The notes under the pieces: model-generated
What the model was told of the DNA's origin: nothing
What the model saw: the letters and a program-made list of their open reading frames with translations, nothing else
Databases searched by the model: none
Position numbers and translations under genes: made by a program
Shown: one piece after another, positions 1-16,936 of the stretch
Layout: the number at the start of each line of letters is the position of its first letter
Position numbering within the stretch: position 1 is the stretch's first letter
DNA from: Octopus bimaculoides
Lineage: Eukaryota
Length of the DNA: 33,388 nucleotides
Assembly: GCF_001194135.2 (NCBI RefSeq)
Contig: NC_068989.1
Span: 23,354,876-23,388,263, forward strand
Direction of reading: 5' to 3'

Positions 1-570
1 ATCCTTTGGCTCTCTCCATATCATAGGTATTGCAAACGGCATTGCTCTCTTCCTCTTATTTAGCCAATCCCTTAGTCCATTTGAACAAGCTGAACAGATG
101 ATGTGCGGGGCCCAACTCTTATCTTGATCCCCGAGAGAGCAGCCAAAGTATAACTGGTAGACCTTCTTGATTTCACTTATGATGACACGTTGCTGAGCTT
201 TGGTGGTAAATGAACCACAGACATGACAAAATATATCAGGACTGTTCTTGCAATGCCTTGACATCCTGAGTAGAATTTGATGGTGGTGATGACTTGGCAC
301 CTTAAACAGAAAGTAAAATTTATGAAAAGAAAAGATGAAAACATAAAATTACAAAATGAATACAAACAGTTATAAAACAGAAGTCAGAATCTACCTGTAT
401 AAGACGTTTACGTGTAGCGATACTGCTGATAGGAGTTACATACCTCTCTTATCTCATCAGAAAAACTGTGCCTGATAGAAGGAAACCGATTACATTTTTG
501 AAATTCACGGACAAAACTACGTATAAAACACCATATAATATCCCTGATGAAAATTGGCTGTTGACCAGTG
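1..570 (-). mobile_element. 5' end of a Chapaev3/CMC-like DNA transposon: terminus, UTR and transposase N-terminus, running off the left edge of the window
   Basis: Manual translation from ATG at 264 (minus) is open to position 1: MSRHCKNSPDIFCHVCGSFTTKAQQRVIISEIKKVYQLYFGCSLGDQDKSWAPHIICSACSNGLRDWLNKRKRAMPFAIPMIWREPKD. This is the Cys-rich LGDQDKSWAPH / PMIWREP N-terminus of this transposase family. The terminus reads CACTGGTCAACAGCC from 570 leftwards and is flanked by TAA (571-573), matching CAC ends with a TWA target. The family name is from recall. Confidence 0.78.
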
Positions 571-754
571 TTATTAAAGTTTAAGTGATAGGAGCTAAAA
601 ATGTAAAAGTATCTAAGGTACGTAAGATATACTATATTATGAGGAAAAGTAATATTGCAGTGAACTTATGCGTTTCTGAGTAGTTTGTTTATTTTTATTC
701 GAACTATGTATTATTAACAAAACCTACACACTAACTAAACTTTATTCTCTTCTA

Positions 755-1853
755 TTAGCGTCAATGATGACATTGTAGTTGGGACAGGGTGCGTTCTACA
801 ACGCACATTTGAAGCTGAGGATATGGCTGTTGTGCTCGTGCAGCACTGTTTGTAGGCCAAGTAAGATGTCTCTGTCGAAAGTTTCAGCTTTTGTGTTGTC
901 TCCATGTTACTCGTGCAGCGGCCTGTTGATTGTAGTCAGAGATGAAATAAAGCTGCAAAATGCCGGTGAACTATTGTTGGGGGCTGGAGCAACCCAATGA
1001 TGTGGTAAACCTGCCCTTGGACCTTAAAAGTTGGCATCCACCTTTCCTCTCTGACAACTTTAGGCCCAAAGGAGGTCATCTGGAAAGCGCAATTGTATGT
1101 CCTGATAAGTTGAAGAAATTCAGATGACGTTCGCACAGATCCTGCCAGCAGGTCCTTCAAAGGCTGTGGAGGGTTTTCAAATGGTGGCAGCTGCACTTTG
1201 CCATTTGAGCAGCACATCCCAGGTGGTTTGGCTGACCATTTCTTAGCATTGCAGTGCTTGGAGGTGGAGCACATACCCCCAATCTCGATTTCAGAATGGG
1301 AGGAGTAGCTTATCGTCGGTTCGTAGATGAAAGCCTTCATTAGCCAATAGGAACTTTTGGGGCTTGTAATGCCGCGAGCAGCTTCTCGTCGATGACTATT
1401 CCCCTGTAACCTACCACGTCTCAGAGGAGTTTCAGCAGATCGTGTAGTAGTAGTGACAGCAGCGTTTTTTAAATTGCAGACTGCCCATTGTTCAGCAGTC
1501 TCGGAGGCTCTTGCTTTGGCAGTGGCGGCAGCATTCTGTGAATTGCGTATTTTCCATTGTTCAGCAGTCTCGGACACTCTTGCATTGGCAGTGGCAGCAG
1601 TGTTTTTTGAATTGCATGCAGATCGAGCTAAGCTTGTTTCTTGAAAACGCACCGAATGGTCCTATGACCTCCTCCTTTTTAGTCGCATAGCTCTTTCATC
1701 GTCACTTTCAGTGACTCTCCAGCTTGTAGCATGCAAAGCGGTCTGAGCCAATCGCAAATTAGTTTCGTCAGAAGTCTCATTGATCCTTCTCGTCCTCTGT
1801 GCCAACGCAGCAGCCATTCGGTGCCCGAGACAGATTCTTTTCTTAGGTGGCAT
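755..1853 (-). mobile_element. Helitron RepHel N-terminal fragment (pseudogenised)
   Basis: ORFs 1662-1853 (MPPKKR...ETSDETNLRL) and 936-1652 contain 23-aa STPR-like repeats (69-bp unit, 1485 vs 1554) and the motifs CCSNGKVQLPP, IRTYNCAFQMTSFG and MPTFKVQGQVYH. Frameshifted continuation FLQLYFISD...LQTVLHEHN...FKCAL*...NVIIDANR reaches ~755. The HUH and helicase domains are absent. Confidence 0.92.
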
Positions 1854-2555
1854 TTTGTAAATTGGGAGAGAGAGAAAATGAAACTGGCAGATGGAGAAAT
1901 GGGATTAAATGAAGGCATAAATGAATCTGAAATTGTGGTTCTGATGAACGAAAAGTCAGCAATGAGAACAAAACTGTTTTCAAGCACAGACGTTTCCCGG
2001 TCATTTCCAAGCAACAGTTACTTGTTTCATCAAACAAACAGCTGAAAAATAAAGCAAAATGCAATAAAATAGAATAAAATGTAAATACATAATAAAATAA
2101 AAAAAAATTAAGAATGCAGACACTCTGTAAGAAATATAACAGTCAAGTAAACAATTTAAACATAAAAGCAAACAAAAACTAATAAACAAAGTGTGCTTGT
2201 TGCTAATTACATTGTCATTAGATTTTATTTTCTAATTGAATAAACCAACACTAATTATCTAACATTCAAAATTTCATGGCAGGAGATAAGTTTCAGCAAA
2301 CTTGTGTAGCATGTTCAGAACTCATTTCTAATGTTGAAATGCCACATATCGAAAAATGCTTTAAATAACATAGGAAATAAAACAGCTACAGCACAGTCAT
2401 CATTTGGTAGCCTCAGCAAGTTGTCACGTGACACTGTTTAAACTTTAACTGACCAATGGAGGGCACATAGTCTTAGCCCACACATTCTCTAACTGAGACT
2501 GTCACCTGTCAATCAGCGAAGCTACTTCAGCGTCAGCCTGTCTCACCTAATGATG

Positions 2556-3895
2556 TTATTTTCCTGCGGGCATGTTATGACTTTCAAGCCATTTTTGGTC
2601 TTCCTGCTTCAGCCATATATAGAAGCTGGCTTTTTCGACTGCTTCCTGTATTCTCCTTATTAGTTTTCTCAGTTCCGAGCTAAAAAATGCAAATCTTCTT
2701 TTGAATAACGTTGTCATTTTTCTTTCAATGAAGTCCCTAGCCCCCACTGCCAGGTGGCAATATTCGACAGTCCATCCCTGTTCTTTGCACTCTTCAATTA
2801 GTTTTTCGTGCCTCTTCTTCTTTCGTTTCTCTGCATTGTTGATGTTCTCTTCCCATGGTACTGTCAGTTCTAGTAAAATTCCTATTCTCCATTCTGTGTT
2901 CCATATGACTAAGTCTCATCTTTTTGTCGTTTTTATGAGTGGAAATATTACTAGTCTTCCCAAATCCGTGGCCAGCTCCCAGTATCCCTTCCATCTTTCG
3001 TCTATCTCGTATATTTTATTTGGAGGCCTGGTCTTATGTCCTTTTCCCTCCTTCTGGAAGTATATTTTCCTGCGTTTTTCCACTTTCGGTTACTCTCCCC
3101 TATTGTATCCTTCGATCTTCTCCTTGAATGCTGCGTTTATGATGCCGAGGACTTGATTATCACGCCATGTATACCTTTCTAGTGCTATCGGTTGTTTTTA
3201 AGTTTCACCGGACTAAGTTCACCGGTGAGGGTAGAACGTCGAAGGTAGACTTTATCAGGAAGGATGTTCTTGCTTGTTCCCTAGCCCAAAGTTCCTTCCA
3301 TGAGATTCTGCGACTGACCACATATTCCTCCCATCTCAGGCACTGTCCCTGTTGACTACATTGCACCAAATGTACTTTCTGCCTTTCTTCTTCCTCCTTT
3401 CTCACTTCGTGTACCACTGCTTCTTTCATCTCTTTTACACTGCTCTTGCAAAATGGCCTGAAATTGTGCGTCCCTAGGTCGGCTCTTGCTTCTTGCGTTG
3501 CTCTGACTATATCGGCGTGTCTTAGTGTTACGATCGCCCTGTTTACTGCCTCTTCCGCATTCCATTTCCTCCCTGTTCGTACCTTTGGAGGGTTTTCTCG
3601 GATGCTCTGATCTTTTGAATACCTTAGAATCATTACTGTCCTCGCCTTTCCTGCTTTATATTCTTCGGTGATCGATGTTATTGGTAGTTGCAGCACGGGT
3701 TTTCCATATAGTGCAGTTGTATTCAGTGGTTTCGGCAGACCAAGCCATTTTATGATAAACACACTGTTCCATCCTTTCTACTCTACTCGCGGCTATTTCG
3801 TACATTTGCAATGGCCACATTATCATTGGGTACAGCCCAAATTGCAGTATCCAACATTTGAATTTTCTCGGCAGCGTTGTTCTGTCAATTGTCTT
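2556..3895 (-). mobile_element. Hero-clade (RLE) non-LTR retrotransposon, 5'-truncated and decayed
   Basis: LKTIDRTTLPRKFKCWILQFGLYPMIMWPL (RT C-terminus), KWLGLP...ALYG...LP, TGRKW, SFLIKSTFDVLPSPVNL, RYTWRDNQVL, and the RLE DLVIW...LELTVPWEEN...K, ending ASFYIWLK. Stops and frameshifts are present and the CCHC knuckle is deleted. Confidence 0.88.
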
Positions 3896-4224
3896 TAATC
3901 GTGTTTCTTTCCTTTGCCTCTTATCATTTAATAAATCTTTATACCATCTGCCAAGACTCTTTACTGATGTAATGGGGGTACATGCATGATTCGCTAGGCC
4001 TCTTCAGAGATTCACAAAAATTCAATACAAATAAAAAATAAAAATAAGAATAAAGTAAAAATAAAAATAAATGAAAAATGAAAATATAAAAATATAAGGC
4101 ACATAAAAAGCCTACAAACAGTATATAAGACCATATAAATAGTTTTAAACACTCCAATACACATGTCTGTGCCTGTGTACATAACCATACGTAGATATCT
4201 ATGGATACAAAAGCATAAATTAAA

Positions 4225-6822: not shown

Positions 6823-8719
6823 CCCTTTAGTGTTCAGATTAATTTGTTCTCACTTTCACATATTATTTATAATAAAATTAAAAAGAATGTATAAAATAAT
6901 ATACTTACAAAATAATACAGTTATGACATATTTCTGTCATGAAACTGCCCAAAGCACCCTTTACACAAGGGCACTTTGCAGAAGGAGCACATATATGAGG
7001 TCTCGACCTGATACCCCTTTGCAGTTTTTCTTTTTTGGAGCGAACACAGTCTGCAAACTTTTTTCCTTCCATTTATCTTTTTGATTTTATGGAAGTCAAT
7101 ATTTTCTGTGTTGACATCCACCTCAGTTAATTTTGCTTTTCTCCCAGTTCTGTGCTTTCTAGAAGAAAAGCCCTCACGTAACTGAGATGCGATGTCAACC
7201 CGAAATTTCAAATGGTCGTAGTCTTTTGGTGGCGGAGGTAGTTTGTGACTTTTTACATATACAATATGAATTTACTATAGTTAAATTCACTAAAAACCAC
7301 AAAATGTACCTCCACCATTTCTTCCCAGGTCGACCAACTGGGTAATATGCACGATATTGGTCGGATTTATCAACCCCACCCATATATTTGTTATAACAAA
7401 TATTCACGAGGGGTTTCCCGTCAGCACCAACACCAGGTTGTTCATTAGAAGACAGAAATAAAATCTGTCTTTTGTCTTTGAAAGCAGTAACTAAAATATT
7501 TTCTTTACGCATCTGTAGAACGTCCCCTCTATTCTTTAATTTTGTTTTCATTTCACAGGGTAAACCTTTACNNNNNNNNNNNNNNNNNNNNNNNNNNNNN
7601 NNNNNNNNNNNNNNNNNNNNNNNNNNNNNNNNNNNNNNNNNNNNNNNNNNNNNNNNNNNNNNNNNNNNNNNNNNNNNNNNNNNNNNNNNNNNNNNNNNNN
7701 NNNNNNNNNNNNNNNNNNNNNNNNNNNNNNNNNNNNNNNNNNNNNNNNNNNNNNNNNNNNNNNNNNNNNNNNNNNNNNNNNNNNNNNNNNNNNNNNNNNN
7801 NNNNNNNNNNNNNNNNNNNNNNNNNNNNNNNNNNNNNNNNNNNNNNNNNNNNNNNNNNNNNNNNNNNNNNNNNNNNNNNNNNNNNNNNNNNNNNNNNNNN
7901 NNNNNNNNNNNNNNNNNNNNNNNNNNNNNNNNNNNNNNNNNNNNNNNNNNNNNNNNNNNNNNNNNNNNNNNNNNNNNNNNNNNNNNNNNNNNNNNNNNNN
8001 NNNNNNNNNNNNNNNNNNNNNNNNNNNNNNNNNNNNNNNNNNNNNNNNNNNNNNNNNNNNNNNNNNNNNNNNNNNNNNNNNNNNNNNNNNNNNNNNNNNN
8101 NNNNNNNNNNNNNNNNNNNNNNNNNNNNNNNNNNNNNNNNNNNNNNNNNNNNNNNNNNNNNNNNNNNNNNNNNNNNNNNNNNNNNNNNNNNNNNNNNNNN
8201 NNNNNNNNNNNNNNNNNNNNNNNNNNNNNNNNNNNNNNNNNNNNNNNNNNNNNNNNNNNNNNNNNNNNNNNNNNNNNNNNNNNNNNNNNNNNNNNNNNNN
8301 NNNNNNNNNNNNNNNNNNNNNNNNNNNNNNNNNNNNNNNNNNNNNNNNNNNNNNNNNNNNNNNNNNNNNNNNNNNNNNNNNNNNAAAACACTTTTGTTTT
8401 CATTGATATTTTCAATATCATCAATAGTAAAGCCTTCAAAATCGGAATCGCTACTTGCTGACACCATTTTTTTCACAACCAAGATAAACACTTCTCTTCG
8501 AACGTTGAAAAAACCATGTGGTCTAAAAAATTTCACAGTATTTATACTTGAATAAAGGCGGGAAAGGCTTCATCTCGCATTATCTCAAAGCTACGAGAAT
8601 TCAATAACGTGATTTGTTTATTTTTTTAGCGATTTCGTAGAGCTATCGGATACGGCCGGTTTGAACAAATAAAGAGGAATTAATTTTGGCCGGTTACGGC
8701 CGGTTTGAACACTAACGGG
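6823..8719 (-). mobile_element. piggyBac transposon with both TIRs and a transposase pseudogene (ATG 8467 to stop 6921, middle in the N gap)
   Basis: Left end is TTAA|CCCTTTAGTGTTCAGA. Right end TTTGAACACTAACGGG has reverse complement CCCGTTAGTGTTCAAA (14/16 match), with a degenerate right TSD. Two subterminal TACGGCCGGTTTGAAC repeats. Protein motifs: acidic N-terminus MVSASSDSDFEGF, YNKYMGGVDKSDQ, KKWWRYILWFL, and the C-terminal Cys-rich CRLC...CSFCKVPLC.GCF..FH. One frameshift near 7215-7230. Confidence 0.95.
7572..8384. other. Assembly gap
   Basis: Run of N. Other gaps: 9318-9327, 12090-12189, 14678-14687, 27386-28293, 30488-31043. Confidence 1.
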
Positions 8720-8908: not shown

Positions 8909-9000
8909 TTAATTCCTCTCATCTAATTGGACAACTATTGTCAACCACATTAATGGGTTCAGTTCTACTTTTCCTCACTCTTTTAGTTTGATCATTGATT
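8909..9000 (-). pseudogene. NS1: Parvoviral NS1 endogenous viral element, C-terminal piece left of the LTR insertion
   Basis: Removing the LTR and one GATT copy restores the frame: ...YKTYQS-MIKLKE*GKVELNPLMWLTIVVQLDERN*. The LK..K..LNPL.W pattern resembles the post-helicase region of invertebrate parvovirus NS1. Confidence 0.7.
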
Positions 9001-9483
9001 TGTAAAAGTTTGATAGTTGTCATAGAGACTTTAGTCTCTCTATCACCTTTCAACATAATTATATATGAAGAGACAATAGAACAATTAACAATATAATAAA
9101 AAAGTTTTATTTATGATGATGCTTGGTTTCACAATTCCTGTCATTTAGCTTAGCAGCTGCTGATTAGGTTGTAGTTTGGTAATGGAAGGTTAAGGGCTTC
9201 TTTGATGCTTGCCAGAGAAACAAGTAGCTATCACCATCGAAGGCATCGAGGTGAAGTGGTAATTTGTTGAGGAGCGAGGAGTTGTCACGTAGAAGGTCTG
9301 AGCTCAACTGCCTAACANNNNNNNNNNGAAGGTCTGAGCTCAACTGTCTAACAAAGTGAAACTCTCTCTTTAAGAACCAGTTTTACTACGCATGCGCACT
9401 TGAGGGGCTTCCGGTGGTGAAGTCCCCTGCGCATGCGCAGAATAGTACTTCCTCAATGGCGGCTATAATTTCGCGCCACTACA
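9001..9483 (-). mobile_element. Solo LTR (Gypsy-like) inserted in the NS1 relic
   Basis: Termini are TGTA...TACA with a perfect 4-bp TSD GATT (8997-9000 and 9484-9487). On the minus strand, promoter-like motifs lie near the TGTAGTGG end and AATAAA near ~9108. Precise excision restores the flanking NS1 reading frame. Confidence 0.85.
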
Positions 9484-10162
9484 GATTGATATGTTTTGTA
9501 ATAAAACAGTCTATTTCTGATAGCATTTTCATCTTGTGGTACGACTCTCCATGGGTTTGTGGTAAACCACATTTCATCCGTGTAGATTGAGGGTTTATCT
9601 ATACAGGTCCCGAATGTAAAACTGTCAGATGCCTGGCATCGCATTCAACCTGTATTCATCAAGCCGTTACGTATTGATCGCAGTATGATTTTCCACTACT
9701 CGGCGTTCCTGTTATATGAAGTCCATTCTTTTTTGGGTGTATTTTGTGGCACACCTCGAAGGTTTCTTTGGCAAATTGCTGTAGGTCAAAGTGGTGATGC
9801 TTTAGCCATGCGGTGAAAATATTTAGGGAAGTTTGCACGTTATGGAACTTGTAGTTCATGTCGGAAAATAGTTCTGTTTTTTTTTTTGGTTGTATCTGTT
9901 GCCAAATTGGAATGAAGACAGTTTCTATATTTAGTTCTGTGGCAGCTGATGTTATGATGCTTAAAAGGTTTCGAGTATTTCGGTATATGTCGTTCCATTG
10001 CTTGTTAATGTTCATGTTGTTTGTATTTTTAGCGTATGTTATTAAATCTCCTAATTCCGTTGAATTAGCGGCAGACATGAGCTGTTTTATGAAATCATGT
10101 ATTTTGCCTTGGACTGTTATTTTATCTGTGTATCTTTCGTCGTTGTTGTTGTTATGTTCTTC
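9484..10162 (-). pseudogene. NS1: Parvoviral NS1 (SF3 helicase) endogenous viral element, central part
   Basis: W..HH.FDLQQFAKETFEVCHKIHPKKNGLHITGTPSSGKSY contains Walker A (9686-9709). After a frameshift: LRSIRNGLMNTG*MRCQASDSFTFGTCIDKPSIYTDEMW (Walker B, 9573-9587), then FTTNPWRVVPQDENAIRNRLFYY (motif C region). The B' segment appears deleted. Confidence 0.85.
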
Positions 10163-10645
10163 TGTAGTTTGGATAGCTGTCATGGTGGTATTTACCTTAC
10201 GATGAGTTAGGCCTAACGATAACAACAATCGTCTCACACTGTGTCCAACAAACCTTCTATATCCAACTTCGATTGGAAAATGCTCCACTTTCCAGCCTGT
10301 GTCTTCACATTTCTCGAGGAGGTTTACATAACAGTCAATCTTTCGAGCCCACGCAGCGGCGTCCATGTTATCTTCATGAGGACCCGTTAACTCGACTAGA
10401 TTTACAACTTTCCTTCTTTCACACCACATTAAAATGTCCGGTTTTTCCGTAACTGGGATGGGAAAGAATCCCTGGCACTCGGGTAAATCTGCAGTCACTT
10501 TCCAATAGCCGTTCCACTTTTCATCTCTCACAGGAAGTTTCTTGTTCTTCTTCTTGAAACGGATCTGCTGACCTGAGCGCTTGAAGGTAATAAAATCTCC
10601 AGATGGTACTTTCAACGGTTTTTTGTCAGTCGATGTCTTTTTACT
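10163..10645 (-). mobile_element. Hero-clade RLE endonuclease fragment (second family)
   Basis: DEKWNGYWKVTADLP...KPDILMWC...VELTGPHEDNMD...RK...GWKVEHFPIEVGYRRFVG aligns by eye to the RLE of the element at 2556-3895 (DERWKGYWELATDL...DLVIW...LELTVPWEEN). Boundaries are approximate. Confidence 0.85.
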
Positions 10646-10802
10646 TACAAATGATGCAAATGTGTTTGTGTAGCAAGTAGCACTGACAAAACATAGTGGC
10701 CAGTTAGTGTGGCAACCCAGGAAATTTGAAATCATTTGAAATTTTTGTAGCTGCAATTAGTGTCGGATTACTGATTGAGCAGGAGTACAGATTGCTGGAT
10801 TA

Positions 10803-10925
10803 GTGATCATGAACTGTATTACCATTATTGTTGATAGCATTTATGTTTGCTTCATGTGAAATTATTTTCCTTATTATTCCAAGGTGACCCCCAGAGATGA
10901 CTAGAAGCAATACTGTCATATTATC
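10803..10925 (-). pseudogene. Isolated ankyrin-repeat coding fragment
   Basis: Manual translation DNMTVLLLVISGGHLGIIRKIISHEANINAINNNGNTVHDH* fits the ankyrin consensus T.L..A...GH..I...L....A..NA....G.T.LH. It is a single degenerate repeat. Confidence 0.55.
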
Positions 10926-11009
10926 AGAGTTTTTGATTTCTAATTTCAATGAATCCTTTGTGGAGGTAAAAATAGAATTTATATATATGTATATATAGGT
11001 ATGTATAAT

Positions 11010-11800
11010 TGAAAAAGTTCTTTATAGTTTAATATGCAAAGGTGGTAAAAAAATTCTATCACTTTTCACAAGTGGTTTGTGCATGTGTTTTCCTTGCTCA
11101 GTTTCATCTCGGATCGGCCAATCCTTGCGTACATAGTGTTCAGCTCTTGTTCTGGAATTCCATAAGCACAGGAAGCAGCAAAATTTAGTATAGCCAAGCT
11201 GAAGGCCAGTAGGCATGGCCACAACCTTAAAATCTGCACAAATATGCCAGGTGTGGTTATCATACTGTATGCTTGTTAGAATTGCTTTCAGATTTTCATA
11301 TAATTCTTTCATGGTTGTCCTATAAGCTATGGGAACATAAGGTAGAGTGTTACCATTGTGTTGCTGAACAGCTTTGATCTATGAAAAGTCGCCAGTTGGT
11401 TTTATCATATGGTATTTCCAGTTGCTCAGAAAGTTCAGTGATGTCATTACAAAGGCATAAGTCATCCTTCATGGTGAATAATGCAAGCAGATCCTCCGTA
11501 CGTTTTCTGTACAGTGTTATCTTCACTCCTTTCTCAAGATTACGTTTTTGGAGCCCTGATGTCATAAACTCACTTTTCTCTGTGCTTAAATAGAGAGCTC
11601 TGCACAAGTCATTTAGAGCCTCTTGAGAAAATGGTATTGGTTTATTCTCACTTTCTCGATCATTGGGCTCCATTCACCACTGGAATGTTCATCAGCACTG
11701 CTGGAACTCTGCATTTCTTGATCTGGAGGTTTGGGCACAGGTAAATTTTCTGAGTGCTCTACTGGGCGCATTGCTGATTGCAAATTTGGGTAAACAATGT
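11010..11800 (-). mobile_element. Chapaev3/CMC-like transposase internal fragment (decayed)
   Basis: YPNLQSAMRPVEHSENLPVPKPP, FSQEALNDLCR.L.LS.EKSE, WRLFID, QYDNHTWHICADFKVV...LQLGYTKFCCFLCLWNSR and LPPLHIKL occur across several frames. Same protein family as 1-264. Confidence 0.85.
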
Positions 11801-11812
11801 GTTTCTTTAATA

Positions 11813-12089
11813 CTAGTTTAAATTGAAATTTACAATACACTCATACAATTTCTGTAATAGATCATATTTCTCATATCTCCGCCGCCACATGAATTCACAA
11901 AGATATGAGTCTATCATAGAACGTTGTGTACCACACCGTCGCTTGTTAGCCCGTTTTACACACGCCCACGTACTTTCAATTTGTTGCGTGTGCGTGTTAT
12001 TTAACGGGTTAACAAACTCGACACTGTGGTTCACCGTTTTATGTTGAAAGTTGTACCCCTCGATCTCCGGAATATGAGAATACGCCCTC
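11813..12089 (-). mobile_element. Merlin (IS1595/ISXO2-like) transposase C-terminal fragment
   Basis: RAYSHI...HKTVNHSVEFVNP..NTHTQQIESTWACVK...G......SYLCEFMWRRRY is the characteristic C-terminal half of the ISXO2-like DDE domain. It is cut by the N gap. Confidence 0.87.
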
Positions 12090-12360
12090 NNNNNNNNNNN
12101 NNNNNNNNNNNNNNNNNNNNNNNNNNNNNNNNNNNNNNNNNNNNNNNNNNNNNNNNNNNNNNNNNNNNNNNNNNNNNNNNNNNNNNNNNTATATATATAT
12201 ATGCACATACACGGAGTAGATGAAACAGGAACAACTGACGAAGGGGTATACTCTTTAGGTTGCATGTCTCGTTTCTCTGTTGTTCGTTGTTCGAAAAAAA
12301 TAGTTCGTTTTCTATGTTTTCATTTCTCATTGTGTTTAACATTTTTTGATGTCCTGTACC

Positions 12361-12529
12361 CATATATGCATGTATATATACATATATATATGTAGGTATG
12401 TACATATATGTATGGATATATGCATATATTTATATATTATTTATATTATTATATATATAGATATACACGTGTGTGTGTGTGTGTGTGTATATATGTGTGT
12501 GTGTGTGTGTATATATATGTGTGTGTGTG

Positions 12530-12573
<44 letters not shown>

Positions 12574-12986
12574 CATACATACACGTGTATGTGTGTCTGT
12601 ATATGTGCATATACAAACATACACTTGTGTGTGTGTGTGTGTGTATATATATATGTGTATGTTTATATATATATATGTATATATACACTGGTATATACGT
12701 TTATGATTTAGTTTTTTGTTTGTTTGATTTACTGTTTTGCCTGTATATATATATGTGTACAAATATGCACACACGTCTGTGACAAACTGGTGTCCTGCCC
12801 AGGTTGAGTGGAATATACACTCTGCAGACCCCAAGACCCCAGCCTTATCAGCCTTCTTGGAAAGAAACTTCTCTCCTTTTGATATTTATACACACACATA
12901 TATGTATGTTTGTATGTGTATATACATATATGTATGTATACATACATACGTACACGTGTGTGTATGTATATGTATATATACATACA

Positions 12987-14333: not shown

Positions 14334-15165
14334 TATAGCCGAAATATTTAATGTAAAATATGTGTTTGGTAGAAGCTAGTTATTGTGTTTATGTATGACT
14401 GGAAATTAGTTTTATCTTTAAATTACCAGGCTTTTGCAGAATTAGTTTGCTAATAATTCAGCACTCGTAATGCTCCAAATTGTTGTAGGTGTTTATTGAC
14501 CCATTGGATAAGTTTTGGGTGTTTAACCCACTCACTTCTTCAATGGTATCTATTGATCACTTTACTAATCCCTGATATAGATAAATGGCAAAAGTGCAAC
14601 CATACCATTTTTGGAGAAAAGGAATTGAGAAAAAAAAATTTCACTACAGAAAAATAAGCAAAAAAAAAAAAAAAAAANNNNNNNNNNAAAAAAAAAAAAA
14701 AAAAAATTTTAATAACAATAGAAATAACGGCTTCATTATTAAAATTAATGAAAAAGTCATTGCATTAGTCATTAAGATTTTAAATATAGTTTACAACTTC
14801 AGTAAAAAAAGAAACCGATTGTTACCGAACACTCTGGATGAAATAGAACTCCAAATTTAGAATGGAATAAATTTAAGAAATTGCTTGCATACCAAATCTA
14901 TTGAATAATGAAATTTTTTTTTATAAAACAAGCTGACCCCGTGATAGTTGAGTTTAATTTGAAACAACCACCTGGTAGTAAATATCAATATAGCATATAG
15001 ATGTTTTATTTATAAGTCATATCATCAATATTATATAATGTCCAACCAATGCTAGCATGGAAAGCGGGCGTTAACGATGATGATGATGACGACGACATTA
15101 CGTGTCATCGTATTCCTTTATTCTTTCACTTCTTTCAGTTATTTGGGTATTAAGATAGTAGCCAA

Positions 15166-16854: not shown

Positions 16855-16936
16855 GACCAGGTGGCCGAGTGGTTGAGGCGATGGACTGCTAATCCATTGG
16901 GGTCTCCCCGCGTGAGTTCGAATCTCATCCTCGTCG
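16855..16936 (+). tRNA. tRNA-Ser(GCT): tRNA-Ser(GCT), variant copy and possible pseudogene
   Basis: 82-nt cloverleaf with a long variable arm, anticodon loop CTGCTAA and a T-run terminator at ~16943. It differs from the 26959 copy by G4C (C:C mismatch in the acceptor stem) and A21G. Confidence 0.9.

What the first reader, a model, noticed from the sequence alone, without database searches (positions are those of the whole stretch)
8909..10162. Endogenous parvovirus NS1 relic in a probable cephalopod genome
Seen: an SF3 helicase layout with HPKKNGLHITGTPSSGKS (Walker A), FTFGTCIDKPSIYTDE (Walker B), FTTN..W......D..A..NR (motif C) and a downstream LK..GK..LNPLMW. It is interrupted by one frameshift, stops, a B' deletion and an LTR. 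Established: the PKKN..I.G..S.GK[ST] context is typical of invertebrate parvovirus (densovirus/hamaparvovirus) NS1. Inference: this is a germline fossil of a parvovirus lineage infecting this host. To my knowledge cephalopod parvoviruses are poorly described, so it may mark an unsampled lineage.
Basis: partly seen in the sequence, partly recalled or inferred. Interest (0 to 1): 0.8.

Follow-up and report, generated by a model that had tools for sequence, protein, structure and literature searches.

The report
Decayed endogenous parvovirus NS1 fragment
A broken, partial copy of a parvovirus replication-helicase gene (NS1) sits among transposons in what is probably a cephalopod genome; this is an ordinary kind of viral fossil, but its lineage is known only from unstudied cephalopod sequences.

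Summary
On the minus strand, about 8936-10150, lies the middle third-to-half of a parvovirus-type NS1 gene. Walker A, Walker B and the downstream LNPLMW box are present. Motifs B' and C are deleted, so the quoted motif C is not there. A profile of 45 relatives hits the pieces at 207 bits (E 2e-62).

Breaks counted:
- 1 frameshift
- 2 internal stops
- 1 in-frame deletion of about 36 codons
- 1 nested insertion of about 0.48 kb, which holds the 10-N gap
- loss of both gene ends, including the whole nuclease domain

No capsid sequence is in the window.

All named relatives are from the cuttlefish Acanthosepion pharaonis; the rest are unnamed sequencing-run contigs. Intact relatives pass Pfam Parvo_NS1. 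Their nearest solved structures are AAV Rep40/68 and B19 NS1. They sit beside a capsid-like gene with the parvoviral PLA2 domain. The best exogenous matches are only 13-28% identical, so no subfamily can be assigned.

The inserted block is not shown to be an LTR. The upstream half of the 365-codon ORF is an unrelated retrotransposon endonuclease fragment.

Parvovirus-related sequences in Octopus bimaculoides were reported in 2016. This is a new member of a known kind. Interest is moderate.

The parts
8936..10150 (-). Relic of a parvovirus-type NS1 gene, given as one part. It keeps the linker, the helicase N-terminal region, Walker A, Walker B and the post-helicase LNPLMW box. It corresponds to roughly residues 180-465 of a 514-residue intact relative. 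Breaks: 1 frameshift, 2 internal stops, 1 in-frame deletion (motifs B' and C), 1 nested insertion of about 0.48 kb, and both ends missing.
9318..9327 (.). 10-N assembly gap inside the nested non-NS1 block. It is flanked by 26-nt copies that match at 25/26 positions, which look like unmerged contig overlap.
10160..10700 (-). Fragment of a non-LTR retrotransposon ORF. It is the C-terminal PD-(D/E)XK-like (restriction-like endonuclease type) domain, truncated at its 5' side and lacking about its last 16-20 codons. It abuts the NS1 relic in the same orientation and, by read-through, in the same 365-codon ORF.
6924..8540 (-). piggyBac-type transposase gene remnant downstream of the relic (DDE_Tnp_1_7 42.4 bits, zf-Tnp_2 33.9 bits). 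It is interrupted by the 813-N gap at 7572-8384.
2481..3970 (-). A second, longer copy of the same retrotransposon family (RT-side and endonuclease-type domain). It shows the family is a host repeat.
23582..23947 (-). A third, short copy of the retrotransposon endonuclease-type domain.
29833..29877 (-). The only other match in the window to the nested block: 45 nt at 97.8% identity to the block's terminal 45 nt, in opposite orientation. Nothing beyond these 45 nt aligns.

Best explanation
This is a non-functional endogenous viral element: a partial, decayed copy of the NS1 (replication initiator and SF3 helicase) gene of a parvovirus-like lineage, fixed in the germline of an animal that is probably a cephalopod.

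Shown:
- The sequence is NS1-derived.
- It lacks the N-terminal nuclease domain, helicase motifs B' and C and the C-terminal tail, and it is broken in several ways. It therefore cannot encode a working helicase or nickase.
- It is embedded in host repeats: a retrotransposon fragment upstream, a piggyBac-type gene downstream and a repeat nested inside it.

Inferred:
- It entered the germline as viral DNA or as a copy of a viral transcript.
- It was then eroded by deletion, point mutation and later transposon activity.
- The 365-codon ORF joining the retrotransposon fragment to NS1 is a chance read-through, not a gene.
For: - Family-profile hits on the window pieces: 207, 55.9, 21.4, 14.4 and 13.2 bits, collinear on one strand, covering profile positions 58-350 of 439 with a hole at 268-303.
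- E 1.5e-42 to 1e-31 to NS1-like proteins in an exhaustive search.
- Those relatives pass Pfam Parvo_NS1 (38-72 bits).
- The profile against PDB returns only AAV Rep40/68 (E 1e-10) and an NS1.
- Fold search of an intact relative: the top 50 BFVD matches are all Parvoviridae non-structural proteins (NS/NS1). The PDB top matches are AAV2 Rep40/68 and B19V NS1, ahead of papillomavirus E1.
- Relatives in two A. pharaonis scaffolds and in Logan contigs carry an adjacent VP1u with the PF08398 PLA2-like domain (32-34 bits).
- The NS1/retrotransposon junction lies in uninterrupted sequence between gaps (9328-12089).
- The two halves of the ORF hit disjoint protein sets, and no hit spans both.
Against: - On its own the window ORF scores 19.1 bits against Parvo_NS1, just under the 20-bit cut-off.
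- The short pieces alone hit nothing in Pfam.
- No VP sequence, no terminal hairpins and no nuclease domain are in the window.
- The host species is not identified, and no orthologous empty or filled site was examined.
- The scaffold has gaps nearby.
- The relatives could be a genome-resident mobile family rather than repeated infections (see rival 1).
Confidence: 0.85

Rival explanations
1. This is a variant of the main reading. The relic did not come from direct integration of viral DNA. It is a copy of a polyadenylated transcript of a parvovirus-derived element, inserted by non-LTR retrotransposon machinery. On this view the abrupt same-orientation junction (retrotransposon 3' region followed by 5'-truncated NS1) is a template-switch chimera made during target-primed reverse transcription. 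The family may spread inside cephalopod genomes in this way.
For: - The upstream partner is a fragment from near the 3' end of a non-LTR retrotransposon ORF. It has the same orientation, and both partners are truncated exactly at the junction. That is the layout expected of template-switch chimeras (established knowledge: U6/L1-type chimeric retrocopies).
- Related copies carry A-runs of 14-25 nt lying 78-264 nt after the NS1 stop (L001, L003, L007).
- The L003 unit is bracketed by similar A-rich tracts 4018 bp apart.
- All six loci with upstream sequence share one VP-then-NS1 layout.
Against: - The relic's 3' end is lost, so no poly-A tail or target-site duplication can be checked in the window.
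- A deletion, or end-joining of viral DNA into a pre-existing retrotransposon copy, gives the same junction.
- The A-runs at the ends of the Logan contigs L001 and L007 may only be where assembly stopped.
- L008 has a T-run, not an A-run.
Confidence: 0.3
2. The helicase belongs to a non-parvoviral SF3 lineage, such as a Polinton/D5-type primase-helicase, a CRESS-DNA Rep or a papilloma/polyoma helicase, or to a cellular AAA+ protein.
For: SF3 cores are similar across these groups. Papillomavirus E1 appears in Pfam at sub-threshold to modest scores (PPV_E1_C 17-32 bits) and from rank 27 in the PDB fold search.
Against: - Parvo_NS1 always outscores PPV_E1_C.
- The PDB profile search returns only parvoviral Rep/NS1.
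- The top 50 BFVD matches are all Parvoviridae non-structural proteins (NS/NS1).
- Relatives have an adjacent VP1u PLA2 gene and an H-hydrophobic-H motif upstream.
Confidence: 0.02
3. The segment is a contaminant (exogenous virus reads) or a misassembly, not host DNA.
For: The scaffold has six N-gaps. One lies inside the region and one 813-N gap lies about 550 bp downstream.
Against: - The copy is heavily broken and partial.
- It carries a nested host repeat.
- It is joined to a host retrotransposon fragment within uninterrupted sequence.
- The gap flanks overlap at 25/26 positions, and the NS1 pieces are collinear across the gap.
Confidence: 0.03
4. The 365-codon ORF is a real chimeric host gene that fuses a retrotransposon endonuclease-type domain to the NS1 Walker-A region.
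For: A 365-codon stop-free stretch is long for an AT-rich, repeat-rich region.
Against: - No protein among 1.84 billion representatives spans both halves.
- The ORF starts inside a truncated domain.
- It ends just after Walker A because of the frameshift.
- It keeps only a stub of the helicase.
- No expression data are available.
Confidence: 0.03

Closest known systems
Endogenous parvoviral elements (EPVs / parvovirus-related sequences) of animal genomes. These include the Octopus bimaculoides sequences listed by Francois et al. 2016 (PMC5013282) and the EVEs surveyed by Katzourakis and Gifford 2010 (PMC2987831).
   Same: It is a partial NS1-derived sequence in host DNA, disrupted by stops, a frameshift and transposon insertion, with no sign of function. 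The 2016 paper already noted mollusc sequences branching outside the known genera.
   Different: - This family is not named or described in any paper I could find.
- The O. bimaculoides protein shown in that paper's supplementary alignment reads differently around Walker A.
- Relatives of this relic carry VP upstream of NS1.
AAV2 Rep40/Rep68 and B19V NS1 SF3 helicases (PDB 1s9h, 9rm5, 7jse, 9kbh)
   Same: They are the best solved matches by profile (E 1e-10) and by fold. Walker A, B, B' and C align in intact relatives.
   Different: Identity is only 14-21%. The window copy lacks B', C, the nuclease domain and the tail. The fold model was of low confidence (mean pLDDT 56.8).
Unclassified metagenomic Parvoviridae NS1 in BFVD, for example Caledonia beadlet anemone parvo-like virus 1 and bird-faeces 'Parvoviridae sp.'
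   Same: They are the nearest exogenous viral proteins found (E 3e-16 to 1e-8).
   Different: Identity is 13-28%, below what I understand to be the genus-level NS1 threshold of ICTV (established knowledge, not tested here). No subfamily can be assigned.
IHHNV-derived EVEs of penaeid shrimp (PMC9357335, PMC12287923)
   Same: They are parvoviral fragments scattered in an aquatic invertebrate genome, some ancient and decayed.
   Different: The shrimp EVEs match a known circulating virus. Here no exogenous counterpart was found in IMG/VR or JGI metagenomes.
Chimeric retrocopies made by LINE template switching (U6/L1-type; established knowledge)
   Same: The layout matches: a retrotransposon-derived 5' part joined in the same orientation to a 5'-truncated second transcript.
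   Different: A poly-A tail and target duplications, the defining marks, cannot be checked because the 3' end is lost.

Membership tests
Parvoviridae NS1/Rep (Pfam PF01057 Parvo_NS1) | Scores at or above the curated Pfam cut-off (20 bits) | tested here: inconclusive
   The window ORF scores 19.1 bits, E 7e-4. Relatives at 44-51% identity score 38.5-71.9 bits.
Parvoviridae NS1/Rep (Pfam PF01057 Parvo_NS1) | SF3 Walker A (GxxxxGKS/T) and Walker B (hydrophobic run plus D/E-E) | tested here: met
   GTPSSGKS and SIYTDE are in the window and aligned to relatives.
Parvoviridae NS1/Rep (Pfam PF01057 Parvo_NS1) | SF3 motifs B' and C (sensor-1 Asn) | tested here: not met
   Profile positions 268-303, which align to B' and C of AAV Rep, are absent from the window copy. 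They are present in intact relatives.
Parvoviridae NS1/Rep (Pfam PF01057 Parvo_NS1) | N-terminal HUH nuclease domain | tested here: not met
   It is absent from the window. Relatives P0153-P0155 and P0036 show an H-hydrophobic-H motif and a conserved Tyr downstream, but that region hits nothing in Pfam or PDB. For the family it is therefore supported at motif level only.
Parvoviridae genome | Linked capsid gene, with PLA2 in VP1u in many lineages | tested here: not met
   No VP-like sequence is in the window. It is met in relatives: PF08398 scores 32.2 bits in L003 and 34 bits in L009. The VP body has no Pfam or PDB match.
Parvoviridae genome | Terminal hairpins / inverted terminal repeats | tested here: inconclusive
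   None is seen at the relic. In L003 two palindromes lie downstream of the unit, but their relation to the element is unknown.
   Reference NS1 sequences could not be fetched. BFVD matches are a mix of unclassified, ambidenso-, chap- and ichthama-type NS1 at 13-28% identity. Six subfamilies now exist (PMC13426907).
Endogenous viral element | Virus-derived sequence physically continuous with host sequence and carrying inactivating changes | tested here: met
   It is contiguous with retrotransposon and other repeat sequence within 9328-12089. Breaks were counted.
Endogenous viral element | Orthologous locus shared with, or absent from, related species | not testable with these tools
   The source species is unknown. 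No eukaryote genome collection is searchable by DNA.
   There are no matching inverted termini. The flanking direct repeat is 10 nt (9/10 identical). Only the block's last 45 nt recur elsewhere.
Cephalopod host | Host genes or repeats nearest to cephalopod sequences | tested here: inconclusive
   - The only named NS1 relatives are from Acanthosepion pharaonis.
- The Helitron-like ORF's best named hits are A. pharaonis (44-48%), hagfish (53%) and Octopus sinensis (70% over 41% of the query).
- A retrotransposon relative is from Argonauta hians.
- There is no near-identical named hit.

The most novel reading that the evidence does not exclude
The relic is one decayed member of a cephalopod-restricted parvovirus-like lineage. 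Its intact members have the capsid gene directly upstream of NS1 on the same strand, the reverse of the canonical NS-then-VP order. This holds in all six related loci where it can be seen. They often end in A-runs. The lineage is either a deep, unsampled parvovirus group with a permuted genome, or a parvovirus-derived element that multiplies inside cephalopod genomes by retroposition.
Probability: 0.3. Interest if true: 0.7.

Novelty: new member of a known kind. Interest (0 to 1): 0.45.

Why it matters
Endogenous parvoviral fragments are common in animals, so the relic itself is ordinary. Its value is as a pointer. The reviews and searches available to me describe no exogenous cephalopod parvovirus (PMC11357303 names none). 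Yet at least 78 protein clusters of this NS1 family sit in public cephalopod-linked data, some with full-length reading frames and a PLA2-bearing capsid gene. A descriptive survey could add a host class to parvovirus natural history. It could give calibration points for dating, and it could test whether the unusual VP-then-NS1 layout is a viral genome plan or a by-product of integration.

Tried and rejected
- A word-indexed protein search with the 365-aa ORF found nothing. A phmmer search against PDB found only noise.
- Pfam on the short pieces alone found nothing relevant.
- I looked for VP or nuclease-domain remnants anywhere in the window and found none.
- I looked for the retrotransposon's missing 3' end downstream of the relic, as a test of 'EVE inserted into the retrotransposon'. 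I found no DNA match and no matching peptide by eye in the three-frame translations.
- The LTR reading of the nested block is rejected. The Rfam scan shows no RNA family there.
- Scans of IMG/VR and JGI metagenomes with family peptide patterns found no relative. The first attempt failed because the alignment was too loose.
- I tried to name the organisms behind the Logan runs through the literature, without success.
- I tried to identify the host from transposon ORFs. The results are suggestive of cephalopods only.
- A literature search for a VP-upstream-of-NS1 layout found nothing.
- The structure model of an intact relative was of low confidence (pLDDT 56.8). Fold matches are used only for which family comes first, not for fine placement.

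Full report
**1. What is at the coordinates**

The signal is on the minus strand. A 365-codon ORF ends with ...HPKKNGLHITGTPSSGKSY. A second short ORF holds FTFGTCIDKPSIYTDE. A third frame holds ...GKVELNPLMWL. The quoted Walker A, Walker B and downstream box are therefore real.

Pfam gives Parvo_NS1 at 19.1 bits (E 7e-4) for residues 258-358 of the ORF, just under the 20-bit cut-off. The short pieces alone give nothing.

**2. Is it more than chance?**

An exhaustive HMMER search of 1.84 billion representative proteins with the ORF gave 964 hits, and they fall into two disjoint sets.
- Residues about 190-359 match NS1-like proteins: P0001 at 1.5e-42, and P0002, P0004 and P0006 at 1e-37 to 3e-31, with 44-51% identity.
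- Residues about 40-201 match the C-terminal domain of reverse-transcriptase proteins.
- No hit spans both.

The NS1-like relatives themselves pass Pfam Parvo_NS1 at 38.5-71.9 bits. A profile built from 45 relatives hits five collinear minus-strand pieces in the window: 207, 14.4, 55.9 plus 21.4, and 13.2 bits. The full-sequence E-value of the largest is 2e-62. The profile hits nothing else in the window.

**3. Anatomy of the relic**

It runs from about 10150 down to about 8936. It covers profile positions 58-350 of 439, roughly residues 180-465 of the 514-residue relative P0153.

Breaks, counted and not located:
- one frameshift
- two in-frame stops within homologous sequence
- one in-frame deletion of about 36 profile positions
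- one nested insertion of about 0.48 kb as assembled
- loss of the N-terminal roughly 180 codons (the whole nuclease domain)
- loss of the C-terminal roughly 90-100 codons

In the alignment of the family profile to AAV Rep, the deleted stretch is the one that carries motifs B' and C. Motif C is therefore not in the window. No capsid-like sequence is in the window.

**4. The assembly gap**

The 10-N gap at 9318-9327 lies inside the nested block, which has no NS1 homology, so no reading frame crosses it.
- Its flanks are 26-nt copies that match at 25/26 positions. This is the pattern of two contig ends that overlap but were not merged.
- The other 10-N gap in the window likewise sits in a poly-A run.
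- NS1 pieces on either side are collinear and on the same strand, which supports the join.
- If the flanks are one sequence, the block is 36 bp shorter than written.

**5. The nested block**

It is not shown to be an LTR.
- It has no TG...CA inverted termini.
- It is flanked by a 10-nt direct repeat (9/10 identical), longer than LTR target duplications.
- Only its terminal 45 nt recur in the window, at 29833-29877 (97.8%, opposite orientation), with no similarity beyond.
- It contains GC-rich palindromes and no Rfam family.

I leave it as an unclassified interspersed repeat.

**6. Neighbours**

Upstream, in the same orientation and the same ORF, is a roughly 0.5-kb fragment (about 10160-10700).
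- Its relatives are the C-terminal domain of proteins carrying RVT_1 and zf-RVT.
- From its position and its D...E...K pattern I read it as a restriction-like endonuclease domain of a non-LTR retrotransposon. No Pfam model covers it.
- Pairwise alignments show it stops about 16-20 codons short of its relatives' ends, exactly where NS1 similarity begins.
- Two more copies are in the window, so it is a host repeat.

Downstream lies a piggyBac-type transposase gene (DDE_Tnp_1_7 42.4 bits, zf-Tnp_2 33.9 bits), interrupted by the 813-N gap.

The NS1/retrotransposon junction lies in uninterrupted sequence.

**7. The family**

A profile search of 5.8 billion proteins found 78 relatives.
- All are unnamed Logan contigs of 1-6 kb, except two proteins of the cuttlefish Acanthosepion pharaonis. 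UniRef names those two 'Parvovirus non-structural protein 1 helicase domain-containing'.
- Full-length members exist (P0153, 514 aa; P0154, 568 aa). They show an H-hydrophobic-H motif and a conserved Tyr upstream. That N-terminal region matches nothing in Pfam or PDB.
- The profile search against PDB returns only AAV2 Rep40/68 (E 1e-10) and an NS1.
- An AlphaFold model of P0153 was poor overall (pLDDT 56.8) but good in parts of the helicase.
- Its top 50 BFVD matches are all Parvoviridae non-structural proteins (NS/NS1), at 13-28% identity.
- Its top PDB matches are AAV2 Rep and B19V NS1, ahead of papillomavirus E1.
- In A. pharaonis scaffolds L003 and L008 and in contigs L009 and L011, a gene with the parvoviral VP1u PLA2-like domain (PF08398, 32-34 bits in L003 and L009) and a further VP-like ORF lie next to NS1.

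A subfamily cannot be assigned with these tools. The PLA2 domain argues, from established knowledge, against the hamaparvovirus-type groups.

**8. Host**

- The only named NS1 relatives are cuttlefish.
- A Helitron-like ORF in the window is nearest to A. pharaonis (44-48%), hagfish (53%) and Octopus sinensis (70% over 41% of the query).
- One retrotransposon relative is from Argonauta hians.
- No near-identical named hit was found.

'Cephalopod' is likely, but the species is unknown.

**9. How it arose**

Shown: a 5'- and 3'-truncated NS1 copy joined to a 3'-truncated retrotransposon fragment in the same orientation.

Inferred: either viral DNA was joined into repeat-rich DNA and later trimmed, or a transcript was copied by retrotransposon machinery with a template switch. 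The second fits the layout and fits the A-runs found 78-264 nt after the NS1 stop in three related copies. It cannot be tested here because the relic's 3' end is gone.

I give the plain 'dead EVE' reading 0.85. Within it, I give the retroposition route about 0.3.

**10. Known or new**

- My searches found no paper on cephalopod parvoviruses or their EVEs.
- A 2024 review of aquatic parvoviruses names no cephalopod host.
- Francois et al. 2016 list parvovirus-related sequences in the Octopus bimaculoides genome. They note that mollusc sequences branch outside the known genera.
- IMG/VR and JGI metagenome scans found no exogenous relative.

Verdict: a new member of a known kind, of moderate interest.

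**11. Housekeeping**

Before I tightened my output, one script result and the notebook entries (chiefly) recorded approximate bounds of aligned pieces and of the nested block. I made no joined, repaired or consensus sequence. The pieces were always compared apart.

Noticed in passing
L003 6894-10696; L008 5060-8822; L009 151-3609; L011 about 200-3400; L007 1-2085; L004 1-1911: In all six related loci where upstream sequence is held, a VP-like gene lies directly upstream of NS1 on the same strand. It carries a PLA2 domain in L003 and L009. This is the reverse of the canonical NS-then-VP order. No second VP follows NS1 in L003, L008 or L009, so a simple head-to-tail concatemer is not supported.
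   Followed up: partly
L003 6800-6848 and 10818-10866; L001 and L007 contig ends: A-runs of 14-25 nt lie 78-264 nt after the NS1 stop in three relatives. In L003 similar A-rich 45-nt tracts bracket the VP-NS1 unit exactly 4018 bp apart. This is a possible mark of retroposed copies.
   Followed up: partly
window about 10160-10700, 2481-3970 and 23582-23947 (all minus strand): There are three copies of a non-LTR retrotransposon family whose C-terminal endonuclease-type domain has no Pfam model. Relatives occur in Argonauta hians, Branchiostoma and many unnamed ENA contigs.
   Followed up: partly
window 6924-8540 (-): A piggyBac-type transposase gene (DDE_Tnp_1_7, zf-Tnp_2) is split by an 813-N gap. 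Two 21-nt direct repeats at 8647-8667 and 8691-8711 may be its subterminal repeats.
   Followed up: partly
window 936-1652 (-): A Helitron-like N-terminal ORF. Its named relatives include several A. pharaonis proteins and an Octopus sinensis protein (70% identity over 41% of the query).
   Followed up: partly
window 11025-11840 (-): Three consecutive ORF pieces (118, 107 and 75 aa) look like a transposon-type protein but have no Pfam match.
   Followed up: no
window 10803-11021 (-): A short ankyrin-repeat-like fragment (Ank_5 21.7 bits, below cut-off) lies between the retrotransposon fragment and the unknown ORFs.
   Followed up: no
window 16855-16936 and 26959-27040 (+): Two tRNA matches in Rfam (55 and 65 bits). 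They may be genes or tRNA-derived repeat heads.
   Followed up: no
window 29833-29877, and the nested block inside the relic: A 45-nt module is shared at 97.8% identity between two otherwise unrelated sequences. The nested block also carries two copies of a GC-rich palindrome 41 nt apart, which looks promoter-like.
   Followed up: partly
window 14678-14687: The second 10-N gap sits inside a poly-A run. This suggests that 10-N gaps in this assembly mark unmerged repeat-ended contigs.
   Followed up: yes
L003 10974-11064 and 11358-11413: Two near-perfect palindromes (40-nt arms at 93% and 28-nt arms at 96%) lie a few hundred bases downstream of the cuttlefish VP-NS1 unit. Their relation to the element is unknown.
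   Followed up: no
window 12346-12834: A long TA/CA-rich microsatellite gives spurious ORFs on both strands.
   Followed up: no
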